A stretch of 64,000 bases of DNA, taken from Rebecca billardiae RCC1528. Taxonomy: Eukaryota; Protista; Haptophyta. The DNA lies in NCBI GenBank assembly GCA_965240325.2, contig OZ251235.1, positions 2,058,503 through 2,122,502 of the forward strand. Reading direction: 5' to 3'. The translations under genes and the position numbers were made by a program. Below are positions 5,324-54,409 of this stretch, in pieces; the stretch's first letter is position 1; the number at the start of each line of letters is the position of its first letter. The notes under the pieces were generated by a model that saw only the letters and a list, made by a program, of their open reading frames with translations, searched no databases and was not told the DNA's origin.

Positions 5324-5687
5324 GGGCCCGGGGCCGGGTGTGAGACTGTGACTCGGTCGTCAAGCCGCATGCGGACTCAACTGACAACTGTGTCTGTGAT
5401 GAATAAACTGAGCCAGGCGCCGGCGGCTCGGCGGCTGCCAGCAGCGGCCAGTCGCCAGCTAGCAGCCACGGTCAGCCCAGGCCGCGCGGCCGGTCACGGT
5501 GGGCCCACCGAGGGCCCACCGGCCAGTCCGGTTGGGCGGTGGCTGGCTGGTCACGGTGGGCTGGTCAGGTGGCGCAGCGGCAGCAGCACAGCTCGGCACC
5601 GCAGCTCGGTCCGATCAGGTGTCACAGGTGAGGGCGGGCGTCCATGACGACAGAAGGGCGCAGTAGACTAGCGCCGGACGATCCGCC

Positions 5688-20352: not shown

Positions 20353-21289
20353 GTCGACGGCGACGAGTCTACGACCACGAGGGCGTGCACGGGTACGATG
20401 GCGGAAGCAATGGCGACGATGGCGGCTCCTCACCAGAACCCCAGCCCCCAAGGCTTGAGGTCCAGTAAGGTCTGGCGTTTGCCACTGGCGACTGCACACG
20501 GCAACAGGGGCGTTTGCGCCCTGTTGTCGTGTGCACACTGGGGCGCAAAAGGGGTCACCCTCAGGGGGTTTCGCACTGCTGTTGCCGTGTGCACCGGCCC
20601 GCTGTGGCCGTGCACACGGCAACAGGGCGCAAACGGCCCTGTTGCCGTGTGCAGGCGTGCATGGCTTGCGATGGCAGCCAGCCGTCAGCAGGGCGCCACG
20701 CCCACTGTTCGTTGGTAGGCTGGCCCGATGGCGTCGCGGAGCTCACGCGTACGGGGGAGGAGGGCATCGACGAGGAGACGACCAAGGGCGAGAAGCAGCA
20801 GGGGGCACGCAGCACGGGGCTCGGAGCATGCCGCGAGCACGCGTGCCTCCACACCGTCGCACATCAACCTTGCTCGTAGCTGTGCGCTGTGCTGCCACTC
20901 ATCTCACCATCGCCCATGCTACGGGCGCGGCCGGGTGGTGGGCATCTACCTGTCGGCGCAGCACTGGCACCGGTGGTCGCCAGACACTCCTCGACTTGCT
21001 CTGCGCGTCACAGCAAGGAGACGGCAGCGGCACAGCTGTGTGAGCTCGCAGATGAAGTGCTCCTCTGCTTTGCGAGGCTGAGAGGCTGAGCACGCGTGGC
21101 GAGCGCTGGCATTCCCCCGCATTCATGAGACCAACAGGTACATAGCCGTGCCCAGGAGCGCAGGACCAACCGCCGGGTGCTGCTTCAAACACCTGCGCCC
21201 CACTCTGCCGGCAGAATGAGGGGCGCTCTACTCTATGCTGCACGCGGCAGCAGCAGCTGGGCCGCTGGGATGGTCCTGCACGGATGACG

Positions 21290-22860
21290 GCGGTCGCCGC
21301 GGCTGACAGCTTGGTGTCACTGGTTCGAAGGGCCTGGACGACGGACGCGCCGAGCGTGGTGACGCTGCTCGATGCGCCCACGGCACTGCCAAGCGCGCTG
21401 GAGCCGCTGCCTCGAGCACTACTGTGCCCGCGCCCAGCTTGGGCAGCAGCAGCTGCGCTCAACTCCACGCCGCGTGCCGTGGCAGCAGCAGGGATGGTGC
21501 CACGGCGGCCGGCGGCGGTCGACGGAGCTGTCGGCTCGGCGGTGCACGCCCGAGGGGCCTGGGCGCTGGGCGCACCGAACGCGGTGCCGCTGCTCGCCTC
21601 GCCCATGGCGCTGGAGCCGCTGCCATCCGACGCTGCTGCGCCCGCGCCCAGCTTGGGCAGCAGCGGCTGCGCTCGACTCCGCGCAGAGTGCGGCGGCAGC
21701 AGCAGGGATGGTGCTACGGTGGGCGACGACGGTCGCTAGAGCTGAAAGCTCGGCGGTGCGCGCCCGAGGGGCGTAGGCGCTGGACGCACCGAACGCGGTG
21801 CCGCTGCTCGCCTCGCCCATGGCGCTCGAGCCGCTGCCATCCGACGCTGCTGCGCACGCGCCAAGCTTGGGCAGCAGCGGCTGCGCTCGACTCCGCGCAG
21901 AGTGCGGCGGCAGCAGCAGGGATGGTGCTACAGTGGGCGACGACGGTCGCTAGAGCTGAAAGCTCGGCGGTGCGCGCCCGAGGGGCCTGGGTGGTGGGCG
22001 CACCGAACGCGGTGCCGCTGCTCGCCTCGCCCATGGCGCTCGAGCCGCTGCCATCCGACGCTGCTGCGCACGCGCCAAGCTTGGGCAGCAGCGGCTGCGC
22101 TCGACTCCGCGCAGAGTGCGGCGGCAGCAGCAGGGATGGTGCTACGGTGGGCGACGACGGTCGCTAGAGCTGAAAGCTCGGCGGTGCGCGCCTGAGGGGC
22201 CTGGGCGCTGGGCGCACCGAACGCGGTGCCGCTGCTCGCCTCGCCCATGGCGCTGGAGCCGCTGCCATCCGACGCTGCTGCGCCCGCGCCAAGCTTGGGC
22301 AGCAGCGGCTGCGCTCGACTCCGCGCAGAGTGCGGCGGCAGCAGCAGGGATGGTGCCACGGCGGGCGGCGGCGGTCGACGGAGCTGTCAGCTCGGTGGTG
22401 CACGTCCGAGGGGCGTAGGCGCTGGACGCACCGAACGCGGTGCCGCTGCTCGCCTCGCCCATGGCGCTGGAGCCGCTGCCATCCGACGCTGCTGCGCCCG
22501 CGCCAAGCTTGGGCAGCAGCGGCTGCGCTCGACTCCGCGCCGCGTGGGGCGGCAGCAGCAGGGATGGTGCTACGGTGGGCGACGACGGTCGCTAGAGCTG
22601 AAAGCTCGGCGGTGTGCGCCTGAGGGGCCTGGGCGGTGGGTGCATTGAGCGCGCTGACGCCTCTCGCCTCGCCCGGCGCGCTCGAGCCGCTGCCATCCGA
22701 TGCTGCCGCGCCCGCGCCCTGTCGCGCCGAGTGCGGCTGCAGCATCAGGGATGGCGCCACGGCGGGCGGGCGGCGGTGCATGCAGCTAGCAGCTCGGTGC
22801 TGCACGCGCGAGGGGCCTGGGCGGCAGACGCGCGCAATGCAGTGACGCTGATGCACGCGT
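21290..22860 (+). repeat. 214-bp tandem satellite array, about 7 copies (left arm)
   Basis: Anchor GAGCCGCTGCC at 21401, 21614, 21828, 22042, 22256, 22470 and 22684. Confidence 0.95.
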
Positions 22861-23639
22861 CAGGCGCGCTGGCCAGCCCCCGGAGCTGTTGCTACGACAC
22901 TTCTTCTGTCCTGCTGCGAGCCGAGCCGCCAGCAGGTTCCGGGGCGGCGGGCAATGCCGGTCAGCTCATATTCATAAGGCCGGCGGCGCAGACCAGTCGT
23001 AGCCCGGCAGGTAGGCGATGCAGAAGTTATCAGCAGCATATCATGCATCGTCATCACTACATCAGCATCCGCCTATAGACGAGTACTACGTAGTATAGAA
23101 CTGCTCTTTATCCGACTAGCCGTTCAGAGCGCGCGCAGTATATACTCCGACTATATACCGGTCGATGCATTATAGCCAGCCCCGGGGCGGCGGCTGTCCG
23201 ACACTCTGCCGTCATGTGCGTATATAAGTGACTCTTACTCCACCTAGCGGTCTATCCGGATCGGTACCCTGGCGGCGGTGTTGTCGTCTGTCCGCCGTCA
23301 CAGCCTGACTCGCGCGCGTAGCTAGTCACTTATCAGTGATGTGATGGTCTCGTCGTCTGCGTCCGGACCGTGTCGACGACAAGTCGTGCTGGGCCCGGCG
23401 GCTCACAGTGTAATAAGTTAGTAGTAGCTAACTCATATCAATGCAAGAGCATCAGTAGTGAGCAGCAGCAGTAGCAGCTCGACTGCTGGCGTCATCACCG
23501 TGCTACACTCCGGCGCGACACGGTCACGGTCAGCTGGTCAGCATCAGTCCGTATACTTACGCCGGGACCGTAGTACTGTAGTTGAGTACGTAGTATACGT
23601 AGTTTTAACGACGCGACCGGTCGGCGCGCGTGCCAAGCA

Positions 23640-26300
23640 GCACTCAGCACCGCCCGACCACCGCCGCCGGCCTGGCCGTGGCACCTCCCTGCTGCTACCA
23701 CCGCATGCGGCGCGAAGCCTCCGGAGCGCAGCTGCTGCCAGGCCTGCCAGCTGCAGCCGTGCAGCGGCGCCGGGGCGCGGGCGCAGCGGGCATCGGATGG
23801 CAGAGGCTCGAGCGCGCTACGGAACGAGGCGAGCGGCTACACCGCGCTCGGTGCGTCCAGCGCCCACGCCTCTCGGGTGGGCACTGCCAAGCTTTCAGCT
23901 GCTGCGGCCGCCCGCCGTGGCACCATCCCTGCTGCTGCTGCCGCACGCGGCGCGGAGTCGAGCGCTGCTGCTGCTGCCCTGGCCGGGCGCGGGCGCAGCA
24001 GCACCGGATGGCAGCGGCTCCAGCGCTATGGGCGAGGCGAGCAGCGGCACCGCGCTCGGTGCGTCCAGCGCCCACGCCCCTCGGGCGTGCACCGCCGAGC
24101 TGCCGGCTGCAGCAACCGCAGCCGCCCGCCGTGCCACCATCCCTGCTGCTGCTGCCGCACGCGGTGCGGAGTCGAGCGCAGCCGCTGCTGCCCAAGCTGG
24201 GCGCGGGCGCAGCAGCGTCGGATGGCAGCGGCTCCAGCGCCATGGGCGAGGCGAGCAGCGGCACCACGCTCGGTGCGCCCAGCGCCCAGGCCCCTCGGGC
24301 GTGCGCTGCCGAGCTTCCAGCTGCGTCGACCGCCGCCGCCCGCCGTGGCACCATCCCTGCTGCTGCCGTCGCACGCGGCGCGGAGTCAGGCGCGGCTGCT
24401 GCTGCCCAAGCTGGGCGCGGGTGCAGCAGCATCGGATGGCAGCGGCTCCAGCGCGCTGCGGGAGGCGAGCGGCGATGGCGCGCTCAGCGCGTCCGCAGCA
24501 CAAGCCCCTCGGGCGTGCGCCGCCGAGCTTCCAGCTGCGTCGACCGCCGCCGCCCGCCGTGGCACCATCCCTGCTGCTGCCGCCGCACGCGGCGCGGAGT
24601 CAGGCGCGGCTGCTGCTGCCCAAGCTGGGCGCGGGTGCAGCAGCATCGGATGGCAGCGGCTCGAGCGCGCTGCGGGAGGCCAGCGGGGACACCGCGCTCG
24701 GTGCGTCCAACGACCAGGCCCCTCGGGCGCACACCGCCGAGCTTTCAGCTCCGTCGACCGCCGCCGCCCGCCGTGGCACCATCCCTGCTGCTGCCGCCGC
24801 ACTCTGCGCGGAGTCGAGCGCAGCTGCTGCTGCCCAAGCTGGGCGCAAGCGCAGCAGCGTCGGATGGCAGGGCTCCAGCGCGCTGCGGGAGGCGAGCGGC
24901 GATGGCGCGCTCAGCGCGTCTGCAGCCCAGGCCCCTCGGGCGTGCGCCGCCGAGCTGCCGGCTGCAGCAACCGCCGCCGCCCACAGTGGCACCATCCCTG
25001 CTGCTGCTGCCGCACGCGGCGCGGAGTCGAGCGCCGCTGCTGCTGCTGCCCCAGCTGGGCGTGGGCGCACCAGCACCGGATGGCAGCGGCTCGAGCGCCA
25101 TGGGCGAGGCGAGCAGTGGCACCGCGCTCGGTGCGTCCAGCGCCCACGCCCCTCGGGCGCACACCGCCGAGCTTTCAGCTCCAGCGACCCACGCCGCCCG
25201 CCGTGGCACCATCCCTGCTGCTGCCCCCGCACTCGGCGCGGAGTCGAGCGCAGCCGCTGCTGCCCAAGCTTGGCGCGGGCGCAGCAGCGTCGGATGGCAG
25301 AGGCTCGAGCGCCATGGGCGAGGCGAGCAGCGGCACCGCGTTCGGTGCGCCCAGCGCCCAGGCCCCTCGGGCGCACACAGCCGAGCTTTCAGCTCCAGCG
25401 ACCGCCGCCGCCCACCGTGGCACCATCCCTGCTGCTGCTGCCGCACGCGGCGCGGAGTCTAGCGCAGCCGCTGCTGCCCAAGCTTGGCGCGGGCGCAGCA
25501 GCGTCGGATCGCAGCGGCTCGAGCGCCATGGGCGAGGCGAGCAGCGGCACCGCGTTCGGTGCGCCCACCACCCAGGCCCCTCGGGCGCACACCGCCGAGC
25601 TTTCAGCTCTAGCGACCGTCGTCGCCCACCGTAGCACCATCCCTGCTGCTGCCGCCGCACGCGGCGCGGAGTCGAGCGCAGCCGCTGCTGCCCAAGCTGG
25701 GCGCGGGCGCAGCAGCGTCGGATGGCAGCGGCTCCAGCGCGCTGCGGGAGGCGAGCAGTGACACCGCGCTCGGTGCATCCAATGCCCGGGCCCCTCGGGC
25801 GCGCACCGCCGAGCTGACAGCTGCGCCGACCCACGCCGCCCGCCATGGCACCATCCCTGCTGCTGCAGCCAATGCGGCGCGGAGTCAAGTGCAGCTGCAG
25901 CTGGGCCCCAGCTGGGCGCGGGCACAGCAGCACCAGATGGCAGCGGCTCCAGCGCGCTGGGCAGTGCCGTGGTCGTGTGGAGCAATGTCACCGCGCTCGG
26001 CGCGTCCATCGACGAGGCCCCTCGAGCGAGCGACACCGAGCTGTCATCTGCGGCGAAAGCCGTCATCCGCCGCGGGACCATTCCAGCAGCTGCTGCCGCA
26101 TGCAGCGCAGACTCGAGCGTGGCTGCCGCTGGTGTTGGCGGCCCGGATGGGCGCGGGTGCAGCATCATCAGGTGCCCGCGACCCCATCGCGGCGGGCGCG
26201 ATGGGCCAGGTCGCTGCGTTTGGCGCGCCATTGCCCAGGCCGTTCAAGCGAGCACCACCGAGCTGTTAGTTGGAGCAACTGCTGCCGCCCGTCATGATAC
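23640..26300 (-). repeat. 214-bp tandem satellite array, about 11 copies, reverse orientation (right arm)
   Basis: Anchor GGATGGCAG or a close variant at 23795, 24006, 24220, 24434, 24648, 24862, 25078, 25292, 25506, 25720 and ~25935. Confidence 0.95.
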
Positions 26301-27178
26301 TGTACGTACTGCTGCTGCAGCATCAACAGCGCCGCTGTTACCAGCAGCGCTGCGCTCGTGTATCCGAAGCAGCACCGCATTGATGGTCCTGCGGTCTGAG
26401 TAGGGGAGTATGCCAGTAGCTCGCATGTACCTGGAGTGCAGTCCATGCCTGTACTGCCTCGCCGAGTACTACTAGAGTAGTAGGACCTCATGTGCTCACG
26501 CAGCTGAGCCGCTGCCGTCTCCTTGCTGTGACGCGCAGAGCAAGTCGAGGAGTGTCTGGCGACCACCGGTGCCAGTGCTGCGCCGACAGGTATATGCCCA
26601 CCACCCGGCCGCGCCCGTAGCATGGGCGATGGTAAGATGAGTGGCAGCACAGCGCACAGCTACGAGCAAGGTTGATGTGCGACGGTGTGGAGGCACGCGT
26701 GCTCGCGGCATGCTCCGAGCCCCGTGCTGCGTGCCCCCTGCTGCTTCTCGCCCTTGGTCATCTCCTCGTCGATGCCCTCCTCCCCCGTACGCGTGAGCTC
26801 CGCGACGCCATCGGGCCAGCCTACCAACGAACAGTGGGCGTGGCGCCCTGCTGACGGCTGGCTGCCATCGCAAGCCATGCACGCCTGCACACGGCAACAG
26901 GGCCGTTTGCGCCCTGTTGCCGTGTGCACGGCCACAGCGGGCCGGTGCACACGGCAACAGCAGTGCGAAACCCCCTGAGGGTGACCCCTTTTGCGCCCCA
27001 GTGTGCACACGACAACAGGGCGCAAACGCCCCTGTTGCCGTGTGCAGTCGCCAGTGGCAAACGCCAAACCTGGCTGTGAGGTCAGGTGCAAGCCGGCCAG
27101 TCCGGTCGTCGTCGGAAAATCGATGGCGTCGGCGGCCGAGCTCGTTTGAATCCGGCTCGCGCTTTTGCTCGGGGCAGC

Positions 27179-34952: not shown

Positions 34953-36739
34953 CGGGGACGGCGGGCGGGTGAAAGCGCGATCGATGCAAGGCGTGGAAGC
35001 CGGTGAGCTCCAGCTCTCACGCCCGGCTTCAAACGCCGGCCGTTTCGGCGCCGGTCGGCACGTTTGACGTTTCGACCTTTTCCCGGGCTGTCCCGGGGGA
35101 GGAGGAGAAAATTCAGACGAGTCCGGCCAGCGACAACGCCGCCTTGCCAATACGGTAGGGCGCCGGACGCAATAGGGAAGTGACGTCTGTGGGGTCACTT
35201 CCGCTGTGCGCACGAAAGTGAGGCCCCAGAGGTCACTTCCCTTCCCCCTCTTATTGGGGCATTTCTTCTAAGTAGCAAAGTCCGGACGCCCAGCTGGCGA
35301 CCGGTGGGTGGCCACGATGGCGGCCACGCCCGCCACGTGGTGTGGGCGGGACCTTGCAAGATCAATCAAGGCGGATACAAGTGGCGGAGACTTTGATCAT
35401 CGGCTAGCCCCCGTGCAGTGTGCTCTTAGCTACACACTTATCAGAGCTGGCTCGTCTCCTCCCTCAAGACCCGCTGCTCTGTCTAGATTCTGGGTGAGCA
35501 TTGCAGCATTCGCCTGATCCTCATGCGAGGGACGACGACAACTGGCGAGCCGCTAGGCTGCTCAACGGTGACGAAGGCAGCAGTCGAGCTGCCAAGCAAA
35601 GGTCGACGCAGTGTACCTGTGCATGCGATGCGCGGGGCAGCGCGCGCCATCGTATCGCCCGTCGCCGTCGGCCACGCAGCTGCTACCGGCCAGCTGACAT
35701 GATGACGCAGGGCCAGCTGAGCAGCTGCTGTGCCGAGGATCACATGGGTGCCAAGGGCTGGCAGGTGGCGTCATCACGGCGTATGCTGCGTGTGCTGCTC
35801 TCACTTACCGTGGTTGACCGGCTGCTCTGCCAGCGCGTGCCCGTGGCTGTTGCTGGGCAGGCAACGGCGCTCCTCCAGCCCGAGACAGGCTGCGCGCGTG
35901 CTGGTGAGCAGCCAACCTGCAGCTGATGTACAGGCGGCCGCAAGCTGGCATGGCCGAGGGCACGCGGTGGCATGGTGTCTATATTAACCCACGAGCTGCC
36001 GGCCGCGCTCGCACACGCCGTGCAATCGCCTGCCGCTGCCGGGTTTGGGCACACTCGCGGGGGGGGGGCGCTCACCAGGCATTGGTCACACGCCCTCGGC
36101 GCCTCTGCCTAGCTAGCACTTGCAGACACACCGTGCGGCAGCCCAGCGGCCACCATCCGCAGCGGTGGCTGCGAACTGGCCGAAGCTACGGGCGCGCGGC
36201 TGCATACTCTCCTTATTGGAACGTGCGCTGTCAAGTGTGATCGAGCTGACGGCGGACACGCCGGTCGGTGCTGTGTTCTTGCGCTCTCGGGGCCGGTGGT
36301 CATCAGGCGGTGGATACGCAGCCCGCCGCCACGGTGCGCCAGCGCCGCAGCCGACGACTGCGGCTGCGACCAGTGTCGCGCAGCGGCGGCTGAGGGCTGT
36401 CGCGGCGGATGCGGCGACGGCGGCGGCGGCGGCGTGGTCTGGGCATGGGCTGCCGACGCCACGCGCGCACGCTGAGCGCGTGCAGCTCAGGCACAGCGAC
36501 TTCGCGCGCTTATGACCGGCTGTCACCAGGCGGTGGACACGCGGTGCGCCGCCACGGTGCGCCGGCGCGGCCGCAACCGACTGCGGCCGCCGACTGCGGC
36601 CGCGACCAGCGTCGCGCAGCGGCAGCTGAGGGCTGTCGGGGCGGAGCGCGCGTGGCTGCGCGGCGGCGTGGTCTGGGTATGGGCTGCCGACGCTGCGTGC
36701 GCACAGGCGTGCGCACCCAGACCGGCGACGCTGATCGAC

Positions 36740-38460
36740 GCGCCCATCGCGCTGGAGCCGCTGTCATCCGACGCTGCTGTGCCCGCGCCCAGCAGCGCTC
36801 GACTCCGCGCCCAGTGCGGCGGCAGCAGCAGGGATGGTGCCACGGCGGGCGGCGGGCGCTGATGCAGCTGACGGCTCGGCTGTGCGCGCCCGAGGGGCCT
36901 GGGCGACGGGCGCGCCGAGCGCGGTGACGCCTCTCGCCTCGCCCGTCGCGCTGGAGCCGCTGTCATCCGACGCTGCTGCGCCCGCGCCCAGCTTGGGCAG
37001 CAGCGGCTGCGCTCGACTCCGCGCCGCGTGCGGCGGCAGCAGCAGGGATGGTGCCACGGCGGGCGGCGGCGGTCGACGGAGCTGCCAGCTCGGCGGTGCG
37101 CGCCCGAGGGGCGTGGGCGCTGGACGCACCGAGCGCGGTGCCGCTGCTCGCCTCGCCCATCGCGCTGGAGCCGCTGCCATCCGACGCTGCTGCGCCCGCG
37201 CCCAGCTTGGGCAGCAGCGGCTGCGCTCGACTCCGCGCCGCGTGCGGCGGCAGCAGCAGGGATGGTGCCACGGCGGGCGGCGGCGGTCGACGGAGCTGCC
37301 AGCTCGGCGGCGCGCGCCCGAGGGGCGTGGGCGCTGGACGCACCGAGCGCGGTGCCGCTGCTCGCCTCGCCCATCGCGCTGGAGCCGCTGCCATCCGACG
37401 CTGCTGCGCCCGCGCCCAGCTTGGGCAGCAGCGGCTGCGCTCGACTCCGCGCCGCGTGCGGCGGCAGCAGCAGGGATGGTGCCACGGCGGGCGGCGGCGG
37501 TCGACGGAGCTGTCAGCTCGGCGGTGTGCGCCCGAGGGGCCTGGGGGGTGGGCGCACCGAACGCGGTGCCGCTGCTCGCCTCGCCCATCGCGCTGGAGCC
37601 GCTGCCATCCGACGCTGCTGCGCCCGCGCCCAGCTTGGGCAGCAGCGGCTGCGCTCGACTCCGCGCCGCGTGCGGCGGCAGCAGCAGGGATGGTGCCACG
37701 GCGGGCGGCGGCGGTCGACGGAGCTGTCAGCTCGGCGGTGCGCGCCCGAGGGGCGTGGGCGCTGGACGCACCGAGCGCGGTGCCGCTGCTCGCCTCGCCC
37801 ATCGCGCTGGAGCCGCTGCCATCCGACGCTGCTGCGCCCGCGCCAAGCTTGGGCAGCAGCGGCTGCGCTCGACTCCGCGCCGCGTGCGGCGGCAGCAGCA
37901 GGGATGGTGCCACGGCGGGCGACGGGCGCTGATGCAGCTGGCGGCTCGGCGGTGCGCGCCCGAGGGACCTGGGCGACGGGCGCGCCGAGCGCGGTGACGC
38001 CTCTCGCCTCGCCCATCGCGCTGGAGCCGCTGCCATCCGACGCTGCTGTGCCCGCGCCCAGCTTGGGCAGCAGCAGCAGCGCTCGACTCCGCGCCGCGTG
38101 CGGTGGCAGCAGCAGGGATGGTGCCACGGCGGGCGACGGGCGCTGATGCAGCTGGCGGCTCGGCGGTGCGCGCCCGAGGGGCCTGGGCGACGGGCGCGCC
38201 GAGCGCGGTGACGCCTCTCGCCTCGCCCATCGCGCTGGAGCCGCTGCCATCCGACGCTGCTGTGCCCGCGCCCAGCTTGGGCAGCAGCAGCAGCGCTCGA
38301 CTCCGCGCCGCGTGCGGCGGCAGCAGCAGGGATGGTGCCACGGCGGGCGACGGGCGCTGATGCAGCTGGCGGCTCGGCGGTGCGCGCCCGAGGGGCCTGG
38401 GCGACGGACGCGCCGAGGGCGATGACGCCGCCTGCTTCGCCCAGCGCGCCGAGGAGCAGC
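36740..38460 (+). repeat. 214-bp tandem satellite array, about 8 copies (same unit as in 20468-27071)
   Basis: Anchor GAGCCGCTG at 36755, 36954, 37168, 37382, 37596, 37810, 38024 and 38238. Confidence 0.95.
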
Positions 38461-38898
38461 TGCTGCCGTTACTCTGACGAGTCTACGTCTACTGAGATGA
38501 TGGCGTCTTGCAGTACGACAGCATCATATACATCTATATATATATGCTGATATATAGCTATGATGCGCGCAGAGTTCTGAGCAGCTCATGCCGCTGCAAT
38601 GACTCTCAGATCCGCGCTGCGGGCCTGACAAGGATGATGATGCGCGGCCTGCGGCCTGCTGATCGGAGGCGATGACGCCGATGCTGACGATGACGTGCGC
38701 CCGGCCTGTCGATACTCGATGGCGGATCGGACGTCCGAGTCATCATATCGATATCGATATCATCATAATATAATTAATGACGCGATGCTGACACGGCTGA
38801 CTGCTATCATCAGCATATCGATCAGCATCGTCAGGATGACGAACATATCAGTCAGCGACAGCAAGTGGCCTGCGGTGCTCATATATATATATATAGCT

Positions 38899-38930
<32 letters not shown>

Positions 38931-39266
38931 CTCTCTAGTCTCTCTCTCTCTCTCTCTGGTAAGTAATATATAGTATGGACCAGTCGACGGACTGCTAGCT
39001 GCTGCTGCTGATGACGACGGTCGTCGTCCGCAGCAGATGTCATCAGCTGCAGCTATTAGTATATACGTACCAGTACGTACAGTATATACATTAGATTTCT
39101 AGTGCCGTCTCGGGGACGCACCGCTGTCCGCTCCGCCGTGTGATCCGATCCGCCGACCGTCAGTGGCGACGCGCGCGAGTATAAGCTGCGCGCGCGCGTG
39201 CGCTATACTAGCCGGCTGAGTCTCAGTGATGTCCGGTCAGTCAGCAGCATATATATACTGCTCGCC

Positions 39267-39385
<119 letters not shown>

Positions 39386-39440
39386 TGTCAGTGCGTGTCA
39401 TTGATGCTCGCGCAGAGCTCATGGTCGTGGCTCGGTCACG

Positions 39441-39775
39441 CGATGCAGCACATTGCGCTGGTGCCAGGCCGCCACGCGCATGGCCGGACATGGTAACGCG
39501 TTGTACCATGAGTGCACTCGACTGCACAAAGGAGCAGCGGGCCCAGAATCCTACGCATAGCGAGCACGCACGCGCGCAGAGCTCAGGGTGGTGGCCCGGT
39601 CACTCGTCGGATGACGTGAGAGAGGGAGAAGCACACGATGCAGCACATTGTGCTGGTGCCAGGCCGCCGCGCGCATGGCCGGACATGGTAACGCGTTGTA
39701 CCATGAGTGCACTCGACTGCACAAAGGAGCAGCGGGCCCAGAACCCTACGCATAGCGAGCATGCACGCGCGCGCA
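39441..39775. repeat. Direct duplication of ~137 bp (period 195)
   Basis: CGATGCAGCACATTG...GAGCA(C/T)GCACGCGCGCAG begins at 39441 and 39636. Confidence 0.9.
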
Positions 39776-41829
39776 GTGCTGAAGGTCGTAGCCGTCGGGT
39801 GATGACACGAGAGAGAGAGGGAAGCCGGCAAGCATGTGCGCATCTGTTGGTTGAGGCGTGGGCCATGGGCGCATCTTGCTTCAAACACGCACGTATAAGC
39901 ACTCGTCGCCGCCTCCCCGGTCTCGTTCGAACCACAAATGAAGTGGAGACTGCAGGCAGCGAAGAGACGACTGACAACTTCACGCCGGGGATATGACGGG
40001 ATGCTGATGGGTGCCATGGTAGCAACCAAGAGTTCAAGGTTGTCCTGCCATTGCAAACGCTTACAGTACGTGTGGTGTGCATGCCCAAGTGCCAGGCACG
40101 ATGGATCAGTGTCGCTGGCGCCATGCCGCTTGCTTGGTCAAGCTGCACGTCGATCCACACGCGCATGCGCACGCGTCGGGCGAGCGCGCGAGAGACCATC
40201 TGGTTGACGCCAAGCTCAAACATGCACGCTGAGAGCTGCAGAGTTTCAGCTCATGAGGTCCGCAATCCGCATCCTCTTTGAGCACTTGCATCGCCATTGA
40301 GCTCGGGGGAGTCGCGTCCTGGCAACTCGACGCAGGCGATCGGCATCGCTCTCGACACGGGCCCAAAAGTCGGCGGCTTCGCGCCAGGATTCTCATTTCA
40401 TCTCGTCATTCTCATCATTCTCATCATTCCCGGCCCGAATTTTGTTCTTCCCGTCTAGCTCTTTCATCGATTTTCGTCCGCGCCCCTGCCGGCGGGTGCA
40501 AAACACCCTCGCCATCACGCGCGCCGACGGCTCGCCGGCAGAGATCGCATGACGGTCACTCGATGATCAGGCGCGCCTGGTCGCTCACCGCTGAGGGCTC
40601 GCCGTGCAATCGTGCCTGAGAGTGACCTAGGGCTGCCTGAGAGACGGATGACATGGTCAGTAGAGGGATGCCCGAATATTGGATCGAGCAGAATAGTAGG
40701 ACGCGAGTTACGACTTATGCTCGAGTAGATAAGATCACTGATCACCTGGGCAATCCAAGGGCGCCACCAATAGACTGCTCTCGATGCCCAGCTGCTCGAC
40801 ACAGCAGCTGCCCGCATCCAGGTAGACTTTCGGTGTCTCCAGCATCAGAGCCTCAGATTCACACCAGCAATAGCTGTTCTGACCGCCGGCAAAGCAAGCA
40901 ATGGCTGAATGGCACTCTCGGCTTGATCAGGATCACTCCGATCAGTCTTACTACTAGGCTGAGATTCCGACGACGATCCCACTAGCCGAAGACGACTGTG
41001 TGGACTACGCGTGAGGAATCAATCTGCGCCAATCAGCGCGTGCCAATGCCTGCTCCCCCAGAGCAAGCAGCCAAGAAGTCTCGCATGTCACGGCTGCAAT
41101 CACTAAGTGAGCGACTCCAAGAACTCACGTTGAGCCCGAAAGTCTCACTCTGGCAGCTGCCGGATCGATCTCCATGATGCTAGGCAGCCCTTTGAAAACC
41201 ATTCCTTTACGAGAAGCATTCCTGAACGAGGCGTTGAACGAAGGTCGTCTACTGCCATTCCATTGCATCCGCGCATTACAGCAGCAGTGAAGAAGTGGTC
41301 GCCACCGTCACGACGAGCAGCGCCTGTGTGTGACGAACCAGCTGCCCGCCAAGGCACACATGGCGATACTCGTCTCTCGGCAGGAGGAGAGATGCTGTAG
41401 GAGGGGACCACCGCTGTGCGGGAATCGGCACACTCCTCGGGCGTGTGGGATCATCCTGTTGTGGCCTGCCCAATCTCGCTGGGAAAGACATGATGGGCGA
41501 TGGCGGCTCCGGCGACCATTTATTGCAGCAGAATCTTCCGTAAATACGGGCGAGGTACGCGAATCTTCAGAAGCCGCTAGCCGATAAACTACACTGGAAC
41601 AAGGGCGGTACTGGAAGCTCCCGCAAATACGATCAGAGTACGCAGAACTTCAGAAGCCCGCTGGCCAATAGTCGGTCGGAAGCCTTCGCAAATACAATTC
41701 AGTGTACACATCCTGAACCAGAAGAGTATCAGAAGCCTTCACAACCGAGGGCGGGGCTTGACGAGAGCCTGCCGCCCTTGCCGCCACCTTCACAGTCGCA
41801 GTCGCTGACACCGAGTTCGCAGGTGCCCT

Positions 41830-43700
41830 CACCGACGCCCTCGCTGCAGCCCTGATCGCATCCGCCGCCCCGCTGCCACCGCAAACGTCGTCGCCACCGC
41901 CCGCGCAACCGCCCTCGCCCTGGCCGCCTACGCGGCCGCCTCCGAGCCCGTCGCCCGTGAGCCCGATTCAGGCCGCGCCGCCCTCGCCACTGCCGCCACC
42001 ACCGCTGCCCGTGGCGTCGCCAACCTCGTCGCAATCTCTGCTACTGCCACCCTCGTCGTTCTTGCCACCACCTCCGTCGCTCTCGCCCTCGTCAGGCCGC
42101 ACTTTTGCTATGCTACCACCGAGCCCGCCGCAGCAGCTGCCGCGCCGCCGCACCAACACCGCCGCCCAGGCTGCCGCCCTTCCCGCCGCCTCGGCGACCG
42201 CTGGCCGCGGCGACGCTCTCGCCACAACCTCAATGACTGCCACCCCCGTCGCTGCCACCCTCGCCACCTCGCCAGCGCCAGCGCCCCCGCCCTCGTCCTC
42301 GCAAGCGTTGCCGGGCCTGCCACCGCAGCTGCCGGGCCACAACCACCGTCGCCCAGGCCGCTGCCCTCACCGCCGCTGCCGCATCCGCTGACTGCACCGC
42401 TGCCGCCCTCGCCGCCAATTCAGTCGCCACCCCCATCACCGCCCTAACCACCGCCAGCCTCGCCGCGCTCGCCCTCGCCAGCGCCGCCTACGACGCTGCC
42501 GCCGAGCCCGGCACCCGAGCTGCCGCCGCCGCCGCCGCTGCCGCCGCCGCAGCCTAGGCCGCCGCCCTCGCCGCCGCCGCCGCGTCCGCGGGCCGTGCCG
42601 CCCCCGCCCTCGCCACTGCCTTGGGTGCCACCGCCCTCGCCGCCCTCACTGCCGCCAGCGTTGCCGCGCTCCCCAGCGCCGCCTATGCAGGCCGGGCCCG
42701 CCACCCCAGCTGCCGCCGGAGCAGCAGCTGGCGTCGCCCAGGCCGCCGCCCTCGCCGCCGCCGCCGCGCCCGCTTGCCGCGCCGCCGACGCCACCGCCAC
42801 CGCCTCCGTTGCCGCCGCCCTCGCCGCCCTCACCGCCGCCAGCGTTGCCGCGCTCCCCCTCGTCAGCGCCGCCTACGCCGCCGCCGCCGAGCCCGCCACC
42901 CCAGCTGCAGCCGCCGCCGCCGCCGCTGCCGCAGCCACAACCCAGGCCGCCGCCCTTGCCGCCGCCGCCGCGTCTGCGGGCCGTGCCGCCGCAGCCCTCG
43001 CCACTGCCTCGGGTGCCACCGCCCTCGCCCTCACTGCCGCCCTCACTGCCGCCAGCGTTGCCGCGCTCCCCAGCGCCGCCTATGCAGGCCGGGCCCGCCA
43101 CCCCAGCTGCCGCCGGAGCAGCAGCTGGCGTCGCCCAGGCCGCCGCCCTCGCCGCCGCCGCCGCGCCCGCTTGCCGCGCCGCCGACGCCACCGCCACCGC
43201 CTCCGTTGCCGCCGCCCTCGCCGCCCTCACCGCCGCCAGCGTTGCCGCGCTCGCCCTCGCCCGCGCCGCCTACGCCGCCGCCGCCGAGCCCGCCACCCCA
43301 GCTGCAGCCGCCGGCGCCATCGCCGCCCAGGCCGCTGCCCTCGTCACCGTCGCCGCCCCCGCCTCCACTGCCCTTGGGTGGCGCCGCCGCCCTCGTCGCA
43401 GTCTCAGTTGGTGCCGCCCTCACCGCACTCGCTACCGCCTCCTTCGCTCTCGCCCTTGTCAGCGCCACCCTCTCGCTGCCGCCGAGCCTGCCGCCGCAGC
43501 TGCCGCCACCGCCGCCACCGCCGCCCGGGCCGCCACCCTCGCAGCCGCCGCCGCGTCCTCTGGCCGCGTTGCCGCCGCCCTCGCCGCCGCATCCGTCACC
43601 GTCACTCTCGCTGCCATCACCGCCGCCAGCACTGCCGCCCTCGCCGCTGCCCTAGCTGCCGCCCTCGCCGCGTACACCGCTGCCTCCGTCACCTCCGCCC
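41830..43700 (+). pseudogene. Frameshifted Ser-Pro-rich (extensin/pherophorin-like) gene fragment with a ~397-bp internal duplication
   Basis: SPPP/PPSP peptides switch frame repeatedly. CCTATGCAGGCCGGGCCC occurs at ~42682 and ~43079. Confidence 0.5.
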
Positions 43701-44253
43701 TCTTTGTCGTCGCTGCCGGTCCCGGCTTCCTGTCTGCCACAGCCTGGTGTGGTGTGCACGCCGCGTGCTTCCAGCTCTCGCAGATGTGGATGGCAGTCAC
43801 AATTGGGCCTACCGTACGATGCCTGCAAACGCACCCCTGAGCCAGGTGCCGCGTCGAGAAGGGCGTGGCAGCCATGCCACCCCACAGGCGGGCCGCCATC
43901 GTGGCCGCCATCGTGGCCACCGGTCGCCAGCTGGGCGTCCGGACTTGCTACTTAGAAGATATGGCCCAATAAGGGAAGTGACCTCTGGGGCCTCACTTTC
44001 GTGCGCACAGTGGAAGTGACCCCACAGCGGTCACTTCCCTATTGCGTCCTGCGCCCAACTGGGCTGGCCTTGCGCCCTTGCTGCCTTTGCAGAGCTACCG
44101 GACTCTCCAAACTCACGCCCGGCCGCCGAGCGACCGGCCCGGGCGGCGCTTGCAGGCTGGCGCTAAGTCGATGACAGAGTCAGAGAGAGTGTGATTGGGC
44201 GCCCGAAGACGCCAACCTCGGACGGGCGCAGACTCGCAGCGGCTGGCGAGCGC

Positions 44254-50365: not shown

Positions 50366-53038
50366 CGACGATGAATGAATGCACGGCTCGGCGCTGGTGA
50401 GCACGTGGGTAAACCTGCTCGCCTTGATGTTGCTCGCAGCTCGGCCTTCCTTGTCGGCCCCCCCGACGCTGCGACGGGCGTCCTCGGACCTTGGTTCAAA
50501 TACGACCAGCCATTTTAGTCATTACCCGCCTGCCGCGCGGTACTTTTTTCATTAGAGGCTACCCAGGTGACCCATTGAGAATGAGCGATCAACCACACTC
50601 GGCTTCGTCGTCCTCAATCCCCGTGGCTAATTACGTTTGTTAATTGAAGCCGTTGATAATATATTTGGTCATATAATCAGCATGTGTTCATCTTACTCCT
50701 CTGGTTCGGTAGGCCGCTCCAGGACCACTCCGTCGCATCACGGCGATTCCCGCCCTTTTTTTAGATGATTCGATGAATACTACTCAAAGGGGGAAAATAC
50801 CGGCGACGACGATGTGAAGAAACTACTGCTGCTTGATGAGCATTTTCTCGACGTCGTGAGTATGTGGCATCTTCTCACCGGAATGGCCCACTGTTCATCG
50901 AGATGCCATGTAAAATATTACTGACGATGTATTGACGACTTCTCAACCCTCGAAGATGCCGCTCACAGCATTTTATCAGTCGCGCCATGCGTTTTTTATC
51001 ATCTCACGGGGGCGCCGGTACCTACCGGTACGGGTAATGAACAGTGCCACTGGGTCGTTATTAATTAAACCCACAAGGGAAGATGTCAGCGAGGACGTGG
51101 GTGATGCGGCGCGAGTGCCGCCTCTGCGCCGCATCGGCATCAAACAGCGCCTCGACCGCGCCTGGCCGTCCGCTCGTCGACTCGCCAACGGCCTGCAGTC
51201 CCTCGCGGGCCAGGTGGATCATCGCGCATGAGAGGTTCCGTTGACAAGCCTCGGGCAAGAGCGGTGGGGCTTCCAATAGCTTGCGTAGCCGCCAATCGAA
51301 AGAGGTAGGCTATTGCGCTCATAGGCCGCACTCGACGAGTCGACGGGCGCTCCTGCGCCCACCACCACGCCGTGGAAGAGGGCCGCGGAAGGGGGGCCGC
51401 GGAGGCGGCATGGCATGCGGGCGGCGTGCCATCCGTCTGGGCGCGTGCTGGACAGAATGCAGCGCACTCCCAAGCAGCAGATCATACTTGCTGGCGCCTT
51501 TCTCACGCCTCATCCCCGAGGCCGCCAGCACATGCCGGGCGCAGCCGCTCGCGCCGCGCGGCCGCGGGTGTGGACGCGTGGCTGGCTGCAGCGCTGGCGG
51601 CGCTGGCGCTTCGCGCGCGCTGCGCGCTTGCTTGCTGAGCCGGGGCACCGGAATTGGTGACACCGGGGTGGGCTGGCGGCGCAGGCGGCGTCGAGAGCGG
51701 GCGGGGTAGCCCGGTCGCACTGCTCGCGCTGCTTCCGCGCCGTGCCGCGCCGCGCGTCTCCGAGCGCGCAGAGAGGGCGGCGACTGCGGGGTCGAGCTGC
51801 AGCGGACCGGCCGAGCGCGCACTCGCGCAGCCGGGCGCGTAGCGCCGGCTGCGCCGCAGCAGAGCAGAGTCGTGCGCGCCGCGTGCGCCCGCATGCGCTT
51901 GCGAGCGCGCGGATGGTGGTGCGCGGCCCGTGCGGCACCGATGGGCCCTCCGCGGAGCGCGCGGTGCGTCACCTGCGCTCGCCGCGCGCCCCGAGCACGC
52001 CGCAGCCCATGCCGGCGCGTGCGCGGGCCGCGGAAGTAGCTGGCTGGTGGCGGCCGCTCTGTGCGACACCCAGAAAACAACCCGGCCGCTGCTGCACTGG
52101 TGCAGACGTGGCGGTACGCGGCGCGCAGGGCGCGGTGGTGGCGCGGGCGATGGCAAGCACGCCGCTGTATGACGCGCTCGGAGGCGGCGGGCGCAGACGA
52201 AGCCAACTACTACTGTAGCCACCGAGGGTGCGCTGTGCGCGTGCATCAGCATGCGTGTGTGTGCTCGACGCGTTGCGCGCCGCGGACCGAGCGCTCGAGG
52301 GGCGCCGCAGAGGCGGCGGTGGCGGAGGCTGCGCGCGGGCGCAGCCGCGCGCGCATGGCTCGCCAGGCTGGAGGCGGCGGGCGTGCTTGCTGCCGCCGCC
52401 TGCGCGCGCCGCCGCATGGGCCTCACTCACGCGCTCTCAGCCGACTCAGCGACGCGTCGCGGCCGTCGCTCGCGCTCGCTGCCTGTGGCTGTAGGCCGTG
52501 TGCGCGGAAGTGCGTCGGCGGCGTCGCGCGTGTGAAGCGCAGGGCACTGAGCACTACTGACTCTGAAGTACTCACTGAGCGGAGTGATGAGGGCGGACTC
52601 ATTCAGATTATTATTCAGAATATCCGGGAGTAATGTACGACGGTAATAATAAGTATTATAATTTATAATAACGGCCTGTTTTATTTCTACCAGAGCCCAA
52701 CGGCGACATTCGCCAACGCGGTAAAATGGCGGCTTGCCCGCTGGTGGTGGGTACCGGCGCGATTGCGGAGTAGTGATGGCACGTCGTTGGCGCATGTTCG
52801 TACTAGGGCGCTGAGCTGTAGCTAAAGATCATGCCAATGCTTGCTGCTAAGCCTTGCCATGGTGCTTCGCCATGACACAGACGGGTCACTCGCAGCGCAC
52901 GGCAGCACGTGACGATCGCCGCGCCGCGGCAGCTGCCGGCAGCAAACCGCGGTTGCGGGCGCGTTGCAAGCTGCAAGCACTCTGCCTTAGCTTCGTCGCG
53001 CCCGTGTCAGTTGGTGAACCAGGATTGTAGAACGACAG

Positions 53039-53505
53039 ATGGACTGCAAACGATACCAGCTCTACTCGCTCCGCCGCCACTTCCTTGTCGAGCGTGAGAT
53101 GTTTGCGCATGCAGCTTGCCGCCTGCATTTGAACGTTGTCACGGCAGGTTGGTGGGCCGGTTGTTCAGGCCTCCTCGGCGTAGATGACGACAAGGTGCGT
53201 GCCCCGCGCACCCATGGCGCGCAGAAAGGCGTGCACACGCGTCATCGCGCATCTGGCAGGCTGCAGTCTTGGCCAAGATGATGAGAACAAGCCTGCCAGT
53301 GCCTCACCACGCGGGCGCGAGCGCGCAGAGAGATCTGGCTTCTGACCCGTGCTCTTCAGTGTACCTCGTGTGCGACGACGACGAGGCGGACGAGCGCCGC
53401 AACTGGATTCGTGCACTCACCGGTCACCGAGGAGTGCACGAATCGCATTCCTCACGCACGTGGGGGCCGCCATCGGCCGTGAGAGGTACAGGGGGGGCCA
53501 GATGA
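53039..53505 (+). pseudogene. Intron-containing PH-domain-like gene fragment inside the TIR element
   Basis: VYLVCDDDEADERRNWIRAL resembles the C-terminal PH helix. Plausible introns 53094-53168 and 53195-53259 join MDCKRYQLYSLRRHFLVE-RLLGVDDDK to it in frame. Confidence 0.4.
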
Positions 53506-54121
53506 AGTTTCCCACTTCGGAAGGGAAGCCATGGCGGGCGTGAATGCCCGTCCCAACGCGATCTAAGGCCCCAGCGCCACGGCCCGGTCACTGGGGCGTG
53601 GCGTAGGCAGGTCGGCGTCGCCGTACGAGCGCGTGTGCGTGAGTGACAGCTTCCCTTCCGACTTTTCGACCACTCTCACGTCCACGTCCACGACCCCGTA
53701 CGACCGGCGCGCCGGTGAGGTTGCGCATGAGAAGGATGGGCAGGTAGCGGCCAGGATCACCGTTCTGACGGTCATACTGCCCTCTGGAGCATGCATTGCG
53801 ACGGTGCATGCCTGGCAATGGTCCATCTGACCCTACAAGCCGTGGATCGGACGAGCAAGGTTGGCTGCGCGGTAGTCGTGCGACCGCCGTCCGACACGGC
53901 TGCCGTGCGAATACGTTTAGCGTGTGCGCGCCTGTCAACGGCAGGGTGATCAACGACCGGCATGGCTAGCAAGCTGATCAGGACTAGTAACAACCTTGTC
54001 TGGGACCACGTCACGCCATTTGGCGACCTCGCCACCGCTCAATGCCCGTCCAGAGGCACGGACGTGCCGCACTACCTGGCCAGCCACCGCCAAAGTGGGG
54101 CCCACCATCTGGACCCCCCTG
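53489..54121. mobile_element. Tc1/mariner-type MITE, copy 2 (633 bp)
   Basis: TA-CAGGGGGGGCCAGAT...ATCTGGACCCCCCTG-TA; homologous to 13479-14109. Confidence 0.88.
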
Positions 54122-54409
54122 TACACTGAACGGGGCGTGACACCCATTCCCACTGGCGGGCACGGGTTTGTCGCCGTGACATAGTAAATGGAATCTGGTA
54201 GAAATAAAACAGGCCTAACTAGCAGTGCTCCTAAGTTTCAGTCACTCGTCGTATCTGCGCCGCCCGTATAGCAGTTCACCGTCCGGGCTCGGCGACGACG
54301 ACCATGATTCGTCGAAACTGATGATAAATAATATTCGCGGACGTCCGACCGGCTCACGCAGTAACGCAGTTATGAGTTAATTCATACTAGCAAGCTGCCA
54401 AGGCAGCCG

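What the first reader, a model, noticed from the sequence alone, without database searches (positions are those of the whole stretch)
35158..44056. The same 214-bp satellite rides in a second element with unrelated TIRs
Seen: this element's ~175-bp TIRs share no visible similarity with the TIRs at 20468/27071, yet it holds ~8 near-identical copies of the same 214-bp monomer. Inference: either the satellite is a mobile cargo module exchanged between TIR families, or it spreads on its own and prefers these elements. A satellite dispersed by several non-autonomous transposon families may be an undescribed system in this lineage.
Basis: partly seen in the sequence, partly recalled or inferred. Interest (0 to 1): 0.8.

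Follow-up and report, generated by a model that had tools for sequence, protein, structure and literature searches.

The report
Satellite-carrying transposon, kin of the foldbacks
An 8.9-kb gene-less jumping element carries the same 214-bp tandem repeat as the neighbouring hairpin-shaped transposons. Its outermost 15 bases and its 7-bp insertion scar show it belongs to the same transposon group, so this is a known design (as in fly Galileo and Tetris), not a satellite moving by itself.

Summary
The element (E2) runs 35148-44066, not 35158-44056. It has a perfect 7-bp target-site duplication (GCCTTGC) and imperfect TIRs of about 188 bp. Its array has 7 full and 2 partial 214-bp monomers.

The genome holds two more E2 copies with different flanks. 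Both carry the array at the same place, with 10 and 3 full monomers. So E2 has transposed with the satellite on board.

Apart from the satellite, E2 and the foldback element at 20463-27076 (E1) share no detectable similarity, and the TIR bodies do not align. Each E2 end matches at 13 of 15 positions (P about 4e-5 per end). The TSD length is the same, and one 'TA-type' and one 'CC-type' tip are paired in the same way.

I recognised five structural groups sharing these tips and this satellite: E1, E1v, E3, E4 and E2. Every one of about 37 array loci I could place lies inside or next to such an element. None was free-standing.

E2's array is a mosaic. Its edge monomers are private to E2 (at most 90% identical to any other). 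Its core monomers are 96-98% identical to foldback monomers.

No transposase was found. The scan had already noted this foldback family on other pieces of the genome, and this same stretch in another window. Verdict: a new member of a known kind.

The parts
35141..35147 (.). Left copy of the 7-bp target-site duplication, GCCTTGC
   Evidence: Identical 7-mer directly outside both ends.
35148..35162 (+). Left 15-nt tip, CAATACGGTAGGGCG ('TA-type')
   Evidence: Matches the tip pattern at a fixed position. The C1 copy starts matching exactly here. Its first 9 nt are identical to the E3 TA-type tip.
35148..35335 (+). Left terminal inverted repeat (about 188 bp)
   Evidence: Aligned with the reverse complement of 43880-44066: 93% over ungapped columns, with indels. 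Folds as hairpins, z -5.0.
35176..35240 (.). Three copies of the E2-specific subterminal motif GGAAGTGAC (one direct, two inverted)
   Evidence: Six matches in the window, all inside the two E2 TIRs; 0.19 expected by chance.
35336..36280 (+). E2-specific left-arm sequence between the TIR and the array
   Evidence: Found only in the three E2 copies and, at about 80% identity, in a relic at C12:1192221-1193258.
36281..36700 (+). Two decayed monomer-like units on the tip-side edge of the array
   Evidence: Internal duplication at 82% identity. About 62% identical to satellite monomers under relaxed BLAST.
36707..36793 (+). Partial monomer (model positions 112-198)
   Evidence: nhmmer with the monomer HMM; present in all three E2 copies.
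36796..38291 (+). Seven full 214-bp monomers, in the order A1 B1 B1 B2 B1 A2 A2
   Evidence: TRF, nhmmer, monomer typing and tree.
38293..38487 (+). Last, partial and diverged monomer at the inner edge of the array
   Evidence: nhmmer model positions 1-192. About 86% identical to its nearest non-E2 monomer.
38500..39400 (.). AT- and microsatellite-rich spacer, with (CT)n at 38897-38957 and (AG)n at 39270-39383
   Evidence: TRF and the sequence itself.
39437..39793 (+). 195-bp direct repeat, 1.8 copies
   Evidence: TRF. Conserved in the C15 and C1 copies.
39800..41800 (.). Low-GC interior found only in E2; no recognisable gene
   Evidence: Only two places in the genome, the window and C15. No Pfam hit in its ORFs.
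41800..43880 (.). GCC-rich block with a 397-bp repeat (about 3 copies); possibly a captured piece of a dispersed low-complexity family
   Evidence: TRF. 99% identical only in the C15 copy; 66-72% identical to over a thousand candidate places. No Pfam hit.
43880..44066 (-). Right terminal inverted repeat, with three GGAAGTGAC motifs
44052..44066 (-). Right 15-nt tip, CAGCCCAGTTGGGCG ('CC-type')
   Evidence: The C15 copy stops matching exactly at 44066.
44067..44073 (.). Right copy of the 7-bp target-site duplication, GCCTTGC
20463..27076 (.). Comparison element E1: a foldback with 583-bp TIRs (99% identical), a 7-bp TSD TGAGGTC, and opposed 214-bp arrays at about 21223-22905 (+) and 23644-26323 (-)
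   Evidence: Five copies per arm of its own subterminal motif GCACACGGCAACAG.

Best explanation
E2 (35148-44066) is a low-copy cut-and-paste DNA transposon with no transposase gene of its own. It belongs to the same transposon group as the satellite-bearing foldback elements of this genome. All of them insert with a 7-bp duplication and end in the same 15-nt tip (CARYMMRGTNKGGCG), with one 'TA-type' tip and one 'CC-type' tip per element. So they are most likely moved in trans by one enzyme or closely related ones (inferred; the enzyme was not found).

In this group the 214-bp satellite is a subterminal module of the elements, not a separate mobile unit. It sits a few hundred to about 2,000 bp inside a tip and always has the same polarity when read inward from that tip. 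It travels when the element transposes. Its copy number then drifts by unequal exchange or slippage.

E2 is a lopsided member. It has short TIRs with their own subterminal motif, an array in the left arm only, and miscellaneous cargo on the right. Its array has been in the E2 lineage for a long time. The array's core shares monomer variants with the foldback arrays, either by retained ancestry or by occasional recombination between elements.
For: Shown:
- A perfect 7-bp TSD, and ends confirmed by two other copies with unrelated flanks.
- 7-bp TSDs in E1 (TGAGGTC), E3 (GGCCAGT) and E4 (GTGGAAT, GCGGCAC).
- A tip pattern built only from E1/E3/E4 matches both E2 ends at 13 of 15 positions, P = 3.7e-5 per fixed end.
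- The tip pattern has 175 hits genome-wide against 38 for the reversed control. A longer E3/E4 form has 30 hits against 0.
- TA-type and CC-type tips are paired in E1, E3, E4 and E2.
- The array is at the same position in all three E2 copies, with 7, 10 and 3 full monomers.
- Monomer polarity is plus in every left arm and minus in every right arm of 13 foldback loci, and plus in E2's left arm.
- All array loci I could place lie in or beside tip-bearing elements.
- The association is old. A-type monomers are private to E2 (at most 90% identical to others; clade support 1.0). The decayed edge monomers are E2-specific. A relic at C12, about 80% identical, joins E2 left-arm sequence to about 1.4 monomers.

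Precedent: Galileo has tandem repeats of about 210 bp in its TIRs, 7-bp TSDs and chimeric copies between subfamilies (PMC3573991). Tetris and DAIBAM share TIR ends and are thought to use one autonomous element (PMC4079207).
Against: - No transposase was tied to these tips. ORFs of E2, of large E3 and E4 copies and of a 13.3-kb element gave no Pfam transposase domain.
- The only P-type RNase H hit in the genome has no tips, TSD or satellite nearby.
- E2's subterminal motif (GGAAGTGAC) and E1's (GCACACGGCAACAG) differ. This could mean different enzymes.
- The census is a lower bound. About 75 of 115 first-look candidates were never scored. For about eight E4-like loci only one tip was located, and I could not fetch them.
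- The inner array boundary in E2 (about model position 170-192) is not at the same monomer position as in the foldbacks (195-196). So homology of the array edges is not shown.
Confidence: 0.7

Rival explanations
1. Lateral capture. E2 began as an element of the same group without a satellite. It acquired a block of monomers from a foldback array by ectopic recombination or gene conversion.
For: - Nothing but the satellite and the tips is shared between E2 and the foldbacks.
- Core monomers B1 and B2 are 96-97.6% identical to E1v and E3 monomers. In the tree each is sister to an E1v monomer (support 0.82 and 0.965), while the flanking A monomers are at most 90% identical to any other.
- Chimeric copies produced by exchange between subfamilies are documented for Galileo (PMC3573991).
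Against: - B1 and B2 differ from the non-E2 consensus almost only at polymorphisms common to all families (one private change each). Closeness to near-consensus foldback monomers is therefore expected without any exchange.
- The A-type edges, the decayed edge monomers and the C12 relic (about 80% identical) show that the array was already in the E2 lineage long before the present copies dispersed.
- The best multi-monomer match outside E2 is only 96%.
Confidence: 0.2
2. Autonomous satellite. The 214-bp repeat spreads by itself, for example through circular intermediates, and preferentially lands in these elements.
For: The same monomer occurs in elements with unrelated bodies.
Against: - No array was seen outside tip-bearing elements.
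- Polarity relative to the nearest tip is fixed.
- Position is identical in all three E2 copies.
- No Rfam family and no coding frame: 214 is not a multiple of 3.
- No target-site signature at the array edges; instead there is a gradient of decayed monomers.
Confidence: 0.05
3. E2 is not a transposon. It is a segmentally duplicated block that happens to be bounded by inverted repeats.
For: Only two to three copies exist, and no transposase is present.
Against: - A perfect 7-bp TSD.
- Tips that match the family pattern at both ends.
- Copies on three contigs whose similarity stops exactly at the tips.
Confidence: 0.03

Closest known systems
Galileo (P superfamily, Drosophila): foldback-like subfamilies and chimeric copies
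   Same: - 7-bp TSDs.
- Non-autonomous copies predominate.
- Tandem repeats of about 210 bp inside the TIRs, whose number differs between arms and between copies.
- Several co-existing subfamilies with different TIR sequences.
- Chimeric copies made by recombination (PMC3573991).
- The repeats were proposed to hold secondary transposase-binding sites (PMC3573991, PMC3688188).
   Different: - No THAP or P-type transposase has been linked to these elements here.
- Arrays are much longer, 7-19 full monomers per array.
- E2 has the array in one arm only and short TIRs.
- The host is a very GC-rich alga. Earlier scan notes call it a Pavlova-type haptophyte; I did not test this.
Tetris and DAIBAM (Drosophila virilis)
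   Same: - A foldback element whose TIRs hold tandem repeats of about 220 bp.
- A second, structurally different element that shares only the final part of the TIRs and is thought to be moved by the same unknown autonomous element.
- No autonomous copy was found (PMC4079207).
   Different: - Tetris has 8-10 bp TSDs, and its repeats also form large satellite arrays outside complete elements.
- Here TSDs are 7 bp and no free array was seen.
- Here the second element (E2) also carries the satellite, which DAIBAM is not described as doing.
The foldback families of this same genome (E1, E1v, E3, E4)
   Same: 15-nt tip, 7-bp TSD, pairing of TA-type with CC-type tips, the 214-bp subterminal array with inward polarity, and no coding capacity.
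   Different: - E2 is not a foldback: a single array and TIRs of about 188 bp.
- It has its own subterminal motif.
- It is low-copy and older, about 97% identical between copies against 99-100% for E1.
- It has private A-type monomers.

Membership tests
This genome's CA...TG, 7-bp-TSD, satellite-bearing transposon group (E1/E3/E4) | 7-bp target-site duplication | tested here: met
   GCCTTGC on both sides of 35148-44066. Compare E1 TGAGGTC, E3 GGCCAGT, E4 GTGGAAT and GCGGCAC.
This genome's CA...TG, 7-bp-TSD, satellite-bearing transposon group (E1/E3/E4) | 15-nt terminal motif, with one TA-type and one CC-type end | tested here: met
   13 of 15 matches at each E2 end to a pattern built without E2 (P 3.7e-5 per end). 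The left end is TA-type and the right end CC-type.
This genome's CA...TG, 7-bp-TSD, satellite-bearing transposon group (E1/E3/E4) | Subterminal 214-bp array with inward plus polarity | tested here: met
   Met in the left arm only. nhmmer finds no minus-strand monomer in E2.
Foldback elements (structural class) | Long TIRs forming most of the element, with the repeats in both arms | tested here: not met
   TIRs of about 188 bp in an 8.9-kb element, and an array in one arm only.
P superfamily (Galileo/1360/P) | 7-8 bp TSD | tested here: met
   7 bp. This is compatible with the superfamily but not diagnostic on its own.
P superfamily (Galileo/1360/P) | Autonomous copies encode a THAP and RNase H-like P-type transposase between the same ends | tested here: inconclusive
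   The genome has one PF21787 hit, a 1322-aa open frame at C21:1532845-1536810 (31.9 bits). It has no tips, TSD pair, inverted repeats or satellite within the 26 kb fetched around it. No transposase domain was found in E2, E3 or E4 ORFs. I did not search hAT, MULE or other transposase families in the genome.
Free-standing satellite DNA | Long arrays that are not part of a mobile element | tested here: not met
   All of about 37 placed array loci lie in or next to tip-bearing elements. The census is incomplete.
Known structured RNA or tRNA-derived repeat | Match to an Rfam family | tested here: not met
   No Rfam match at gathering score in 20000-45000.

The most novel reading that the evidence does not exclude
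The 214-bp monomer is a functional transposition module, for example a block of secondary binding sites for the unknown enzyme. Elements with otherwise unrelated bodies have repeatedly acquired and kept it because it raises their mobility. On this reading the satellite is a selected, exchangeable 'enhancer cassette' shared across families of an algal transposon group whose enzyme is still unknown.
Probability: 0.12. Interest if true: 0.6.

Novelty: new member of a known kind. Interest (0 to 1): 0.3.

Why it matters
The case shows that, in a little-studied GC-rich alga, one tandem repeat is spread through gene-rich DNA by a set of related non-autonomous transposons, not by satellite-specific mechanisms. 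It also gives a compact signature, the 15-nt tip plus a 7-bp TSD. That signature can be used to find the missing autonomous element and to annotate the whole group.

The foldback families were already noted elsewhere in this scan. What E2 adds is modest. The satellite is not tied to the foldback architecture. Its association with an E2-type arm is old. Array size changes after each transposition.

Tried and rejected
1. **'Each monomer contains the E2 tip motif.'** GGGCGNNGGACGCA occurs only in the two E2 tips and in six monomers. But local alignment of the TIRs against a monomer dimer is not better than chance (p 0.16-0.61). Dropped.
2. **Transposase in enlarged copies.** The 4-kb centres of C35:178573-192218 and C15:1773864-1787908, and the 6.6-kb left part of C16:635161-648467, gave no Pfam transposase. 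The two 4-kb centres are mostly unrelated to each other. One contains a copy of the window's 52673-54215 element.
3. **The P-type ORF at C21 as the partner enzyme.** No tips with a 7-bp TSD, no inverted repeats and no satellite in the 26 kb fetched around it. It is left as a candidate only.
4. **The pairs of CAGCCAAGTGTGGCG about 860 bp apart as satellite-free MITEs of the group.** Their outer 7 nt are reverse complements of each other and identical at two loci. The inverted repeat therefore runs past the motif, and these are not clean element ends. Not used.
5. **A shared inner array boundary as proof of common descent.** E2 ends at about model position 170-192 and the foldbacks at 195-196. 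Inconclusive.
6. **Recent transfer inferred from the closeness of B-type monomers.** Weakened by the consensus analysis.
7. **Fetching eight further array loci.** I placed them only by nearby tip hits.
8. **Organism identity.** Not tested. 'Haptophyte / Pavlova-type' comes from earlier notes only.
Full report
**Setting**

The window is G000:C18:2058503-2122502 of a 72-Mb, 41-contig, GC-rich eukaryotic assembly with many dinucleotide microsatellites. I did not determine the organism. Earlier scan notes call it a Pavlova-type haptophyte.

**Checking the observation**

- Tandem Repeats Finder reports a period-214 array at 36795-38449 (7.7 copies, 95% matches). It reports the same period at 21395-22718 and, in inverted orientation, at 23773-25962.
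- An HMM built from the E2 monomers resolves the E2 array into a partial unit (36707-36793), seven full units (36796-38291) and a last, diverged partial unit (38293-38487).
- BLAST of the whole element against the element at 20463-27076 (E1) finds only the satellite, at 36711-38463.
- Beyond their first 15 nt, the E2 TIRs give no better-than-chance local alignment with the TIRs of E1 or of two further families (p 0.16-0.71).

**True ends**

- The C1 copy starts matching at 35148 and the C15 copy stops matching at 44066.
- Directly outside these positions the window has the same 7-mer, GCCTTGC (35141-35147 and 44067-44073).
- The element is therefore 35148-44066 (8,919 bp).
- Its imperfect TIRs are about 188 bp: 93% identity over ungapped columns, with 27 gap columns.
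- Each TIR holds three copies of GGAAGTGAC arranged as hairpins. All six matches in the window lie in the two E2 TIRs, against 0.19 expected.

**E2 is a real, mobile, low-copy family**

Three copies exist.
- The window copy is intact.
- C15:2003044-2012494 is about 97% identical and lacks the first 125 bp.
- The C1 copy has its tip at C1:2949410. A 17.9-kb insertion flanked by a duplicated TA separates that tip from the rest (from 2967346). The copy is truncated after the equivalent of about 39777.
- Flanks differ in all three copies.
- An older relic at C12:1192221-1193258 is about 80% identical to 35270-36296. It runs straight into about 1.4 monomers.
- The interior 39800-41800 occurs only in the window and C15 copies.
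- All three copies carry the array at the same place, with 7, 10 and 3 full monomers. The element therefore moved with the array, and the array changed length afterwards.

**Relation to the other satellite carriers**

- E1 has 583-bp TIRs (99% identical), at least 15 near-identical copies in the genome and a 7-bp TSD, TGAGGTC.
- Following the monomer hits through the genome showed further structural families.
  - E1v: two copies about 90% identical to E1.
  - E3: eight copies of 9.8-15.4 kb with TIRs of at least 1.5-1.7 kb. The inner 444 bp of these TIRs is 94% identical to E1, but the outer part is different. One copy has the TSD GGCCAGT.
  - E4: C15:1896058-1905847 with TSD GTGGAAT, and C16:635161-648467 with TSD GCGGCAC. 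About eight further loci show one located tip each.
- Every family ends in the same 15-nt motif, in two forms.

| Family | TA-type tip | CC-type tip |
|---|---|---|
| E1 | CAGTAAGGTCTGGCG | CAGCCAGGTTTGGCG |
| E3 | CAATACGGTTTGGCG | CAACCCGGTTTGGCG |
| E4 | CAATAAGGTTTGGCG | CAGCCAGGTTTGGCG |
| E2 | CAATACGGTAGGGCG | CAGCCCAGTTGGGCG |

- A pattern built from E1, E3 and E4 alone matches each E2 end at 13 of 15 positions. These positions were fixed independently by the TSD. P is 3.7e-5 per end.
- Genome-wide the tip pattern has 175 hits against 38 for the reversed control. A longer E3/E4 form has 30 hits against 0.
- I derived the tips and TSDs before reading an earlier first-reader note on this stretch that says the same (s1-355055).
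- The subterminal motifs differ between families: GGAAGTGAC in E2 and GCACACGGCAACAG in E1, five copies per arm.
- So E2 and the foldbacks form one transposon group with diverged TIR bodies.

**Where the satellite lies**

- From the listed hits of two monomer searches and two tip searches I placed about 37 array loci: 15 E1, 2 E1v, 8 E3, about 10 E4-like and 3 E2. All lie inside or within a few kb of a tip-bearing element.
- This count is a lower bound. Only 40 of about 115 first-look candidates were scored.
- In all 13 foldback loci examined, monomers are in plus polarity in the left arm and minus polarity in the right arm. In E2 the single array is in the left arm, in plus polarity.
- Every array has decayed monomers on its tip-side edge. 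In E2 these are 36281-36700, about 62% identical to the monomer.

**Monomer relationships**

I compared 249 full monomers from 16 loci.
- E2 holds two kinds of monomer.
- A-type monomers sit at the array edges (units 1, 6 and 7 in the window). They are private to E2: at most 90% identical to any other monomer held, and at most about 90% to any scored genomic match. Their clade has support 1.0.
- B-type monomers form the core. B1 and B2 are 96-97.6% identical to particular E1v and E3 monomers. In the tree each is sister to an E1v monomer (support 0.82 and 0.965).
- The order is A1 B1 B1 B2 B1 A2 A2 in the window, A1 B1x7 B2 B2 in C15, and A1 B1 A2 in C1.
- B1 and B2 differ from the non-E2 consensus almost only at polymorphisms common to all families, with one private change each. 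A-type monomers also share some rare states with a subset of E4 monomers.
- The families therefore draw on a common pool of monomer variants. Retained ancestry and occasional recombination between elements both fit, and I cannot separate them.

**Coding capacity and enzyme**

- No ORF of E2 has a Pfam match of note.
- The right-hand GCC-rich block (about 41800-43880, a 397-bp repeat) resembles more than a thousand genomic places at 66-72% identity. It is probably a captured or convergent low-complexity sequence.
- No Rfam family matches in 20000-45000.
- Enlarged E3 and E4 copies gave no transposase domain.
- A genome-wide search with the P-type RNase H domain (PF21787) found one place, a 1322-aa open frame at C21:1532845-1536810 next to a Copia-type polyprotein. 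It has no tips, TSD pair, inverted repeats or satellite nearby.
- The enzyme therefore remains unknown. The 7-bp TSD is compatible with the P superfamily, but membership is untested.

**Mechanism**

- Shown: E2 transposes as a unit with its array, it shares tips and TSD length with the foldback families, and arrays change length after insertion.
- Inferred: one enzyme or closely related ones, supplied in trans, recognise the shared tips. The satellite is a subterminal module inherited within this group and possibly exchanged by recombination between arrays. E2 is a lopsided derivative that kept or gained an array in one arm and picked up other cargo.
- Rejected or unsupported: spread of the satellite on its own, chance inverted repeats around a segmental duplication, and the idea that each monomer carries the tip motif.

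**Comparison with known systems**

- Galileo in Drosophila has 7-bp TSDs and tandem repeats of about 210 bp inside the TIRs that vary between arms. It also has several co-existing subfamilies and chimeric copies made by exchange (PMC3573991).
- Tetris has 220-bp TIR repeats and shares only its TIR ends with the different element DAIBAM. Both are thought to be moved by one undiscovered autonomous element (PMC4079207).
- The present case repeats this design in an alga. It differs in three ways: the arrays are long, the second element type also carries the satellite while not being a foldback, and no free arrays were seen.
- It is a new member of a known kind. The scan had already recorded the foldback families on other pieces of this genome (s1-357937, s1-346320, s1-346305, s1-357901).

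Noticed in passing
G000:C21:1532845-1536810 (minus strand; L027:845-4810): A 1322-aa open frame with a P-transposase-type RNase H N-terminal domain (PF21787, 31.9 bits). It is the only such hit in the genome. It sits next to a 2229-aa Copia-type polyprotein (RVT_2) at C21:1525111-1531797. No tips, TSD pair, inverted repeats or 214-bp monomers within the 26 kb fetched around it.
   Followed up: partly
G000:C1:2949410-2967346 (L022, L023, L003): The C1 copy of E2 is split after its first 26 bases by a 17.9-kb insertion flanked by a duplicated TA. This fits a Tc1/mariner-type insertion. The inserted element was not characterised.
   Followed up: no
G000:C12:1192221-1193470 (L005:3221-4470): An old relic (about 80% identical) of the E2 left arm, joined directly to about 1.4 diverged 214-bp monomers. 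It has no tip and no array. It may show an early state of the link between arm and monomer.
   Followed up: partly
window 41800-43880: A GCC-rich block with a 397-bp repeat. It matches over a thousand candidate places in the genome at 66-72% identity, some as multi-kb arrays (for example C30:95099-100609 and C1:4279144-4286822). This may be a large low-complexity (Gly- or Pro-rich) gene family, or simply shared composition.
   Followed up: partly
G000:C3:2630225-2631103, C5:305703-306557 and at least six similar pairs: Pairs of the tip-like 15-mer CAGCCAAGTGTGGCG in inverted orientation about 860 bp apart. At two loci the outer 7 nt are identical and are reverse complements of each other. The inverted repeat therefore extends further out, and the true element ends were not found. 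No 214-bp monomers inside.
   Followed up: partly
window 5524-5538: A lone exact match to the tip pattern (CAGTCCGGTTGGGCG) with no inverted partner in the window. The same 15-mer occurs at C5:4376254. Either chance or the end of another family.
   Followed up: partly
G000:C15:1775001-1789000 (L008:4877-5785) versus window 52673-54215: The enlarged centre of one E3 copy contains a copy (83-97% identical) of the element at window 52673-54215, which another note calls a Pack-type element. This indicates nesting of transposons inside the foldbacks.
   Followed up: no
G000:C16:635161-648467 (L018, L019): A 13.3-kb unit with a perfect 7-bp TSD (GCGGCAC) and a CC-type and a TA-type tip. It consists of 6.6 kb of unique sequence with no Pfam hit, followed by a complete E4-type foldback. 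A composite element of the same group.
   Followed up: partly
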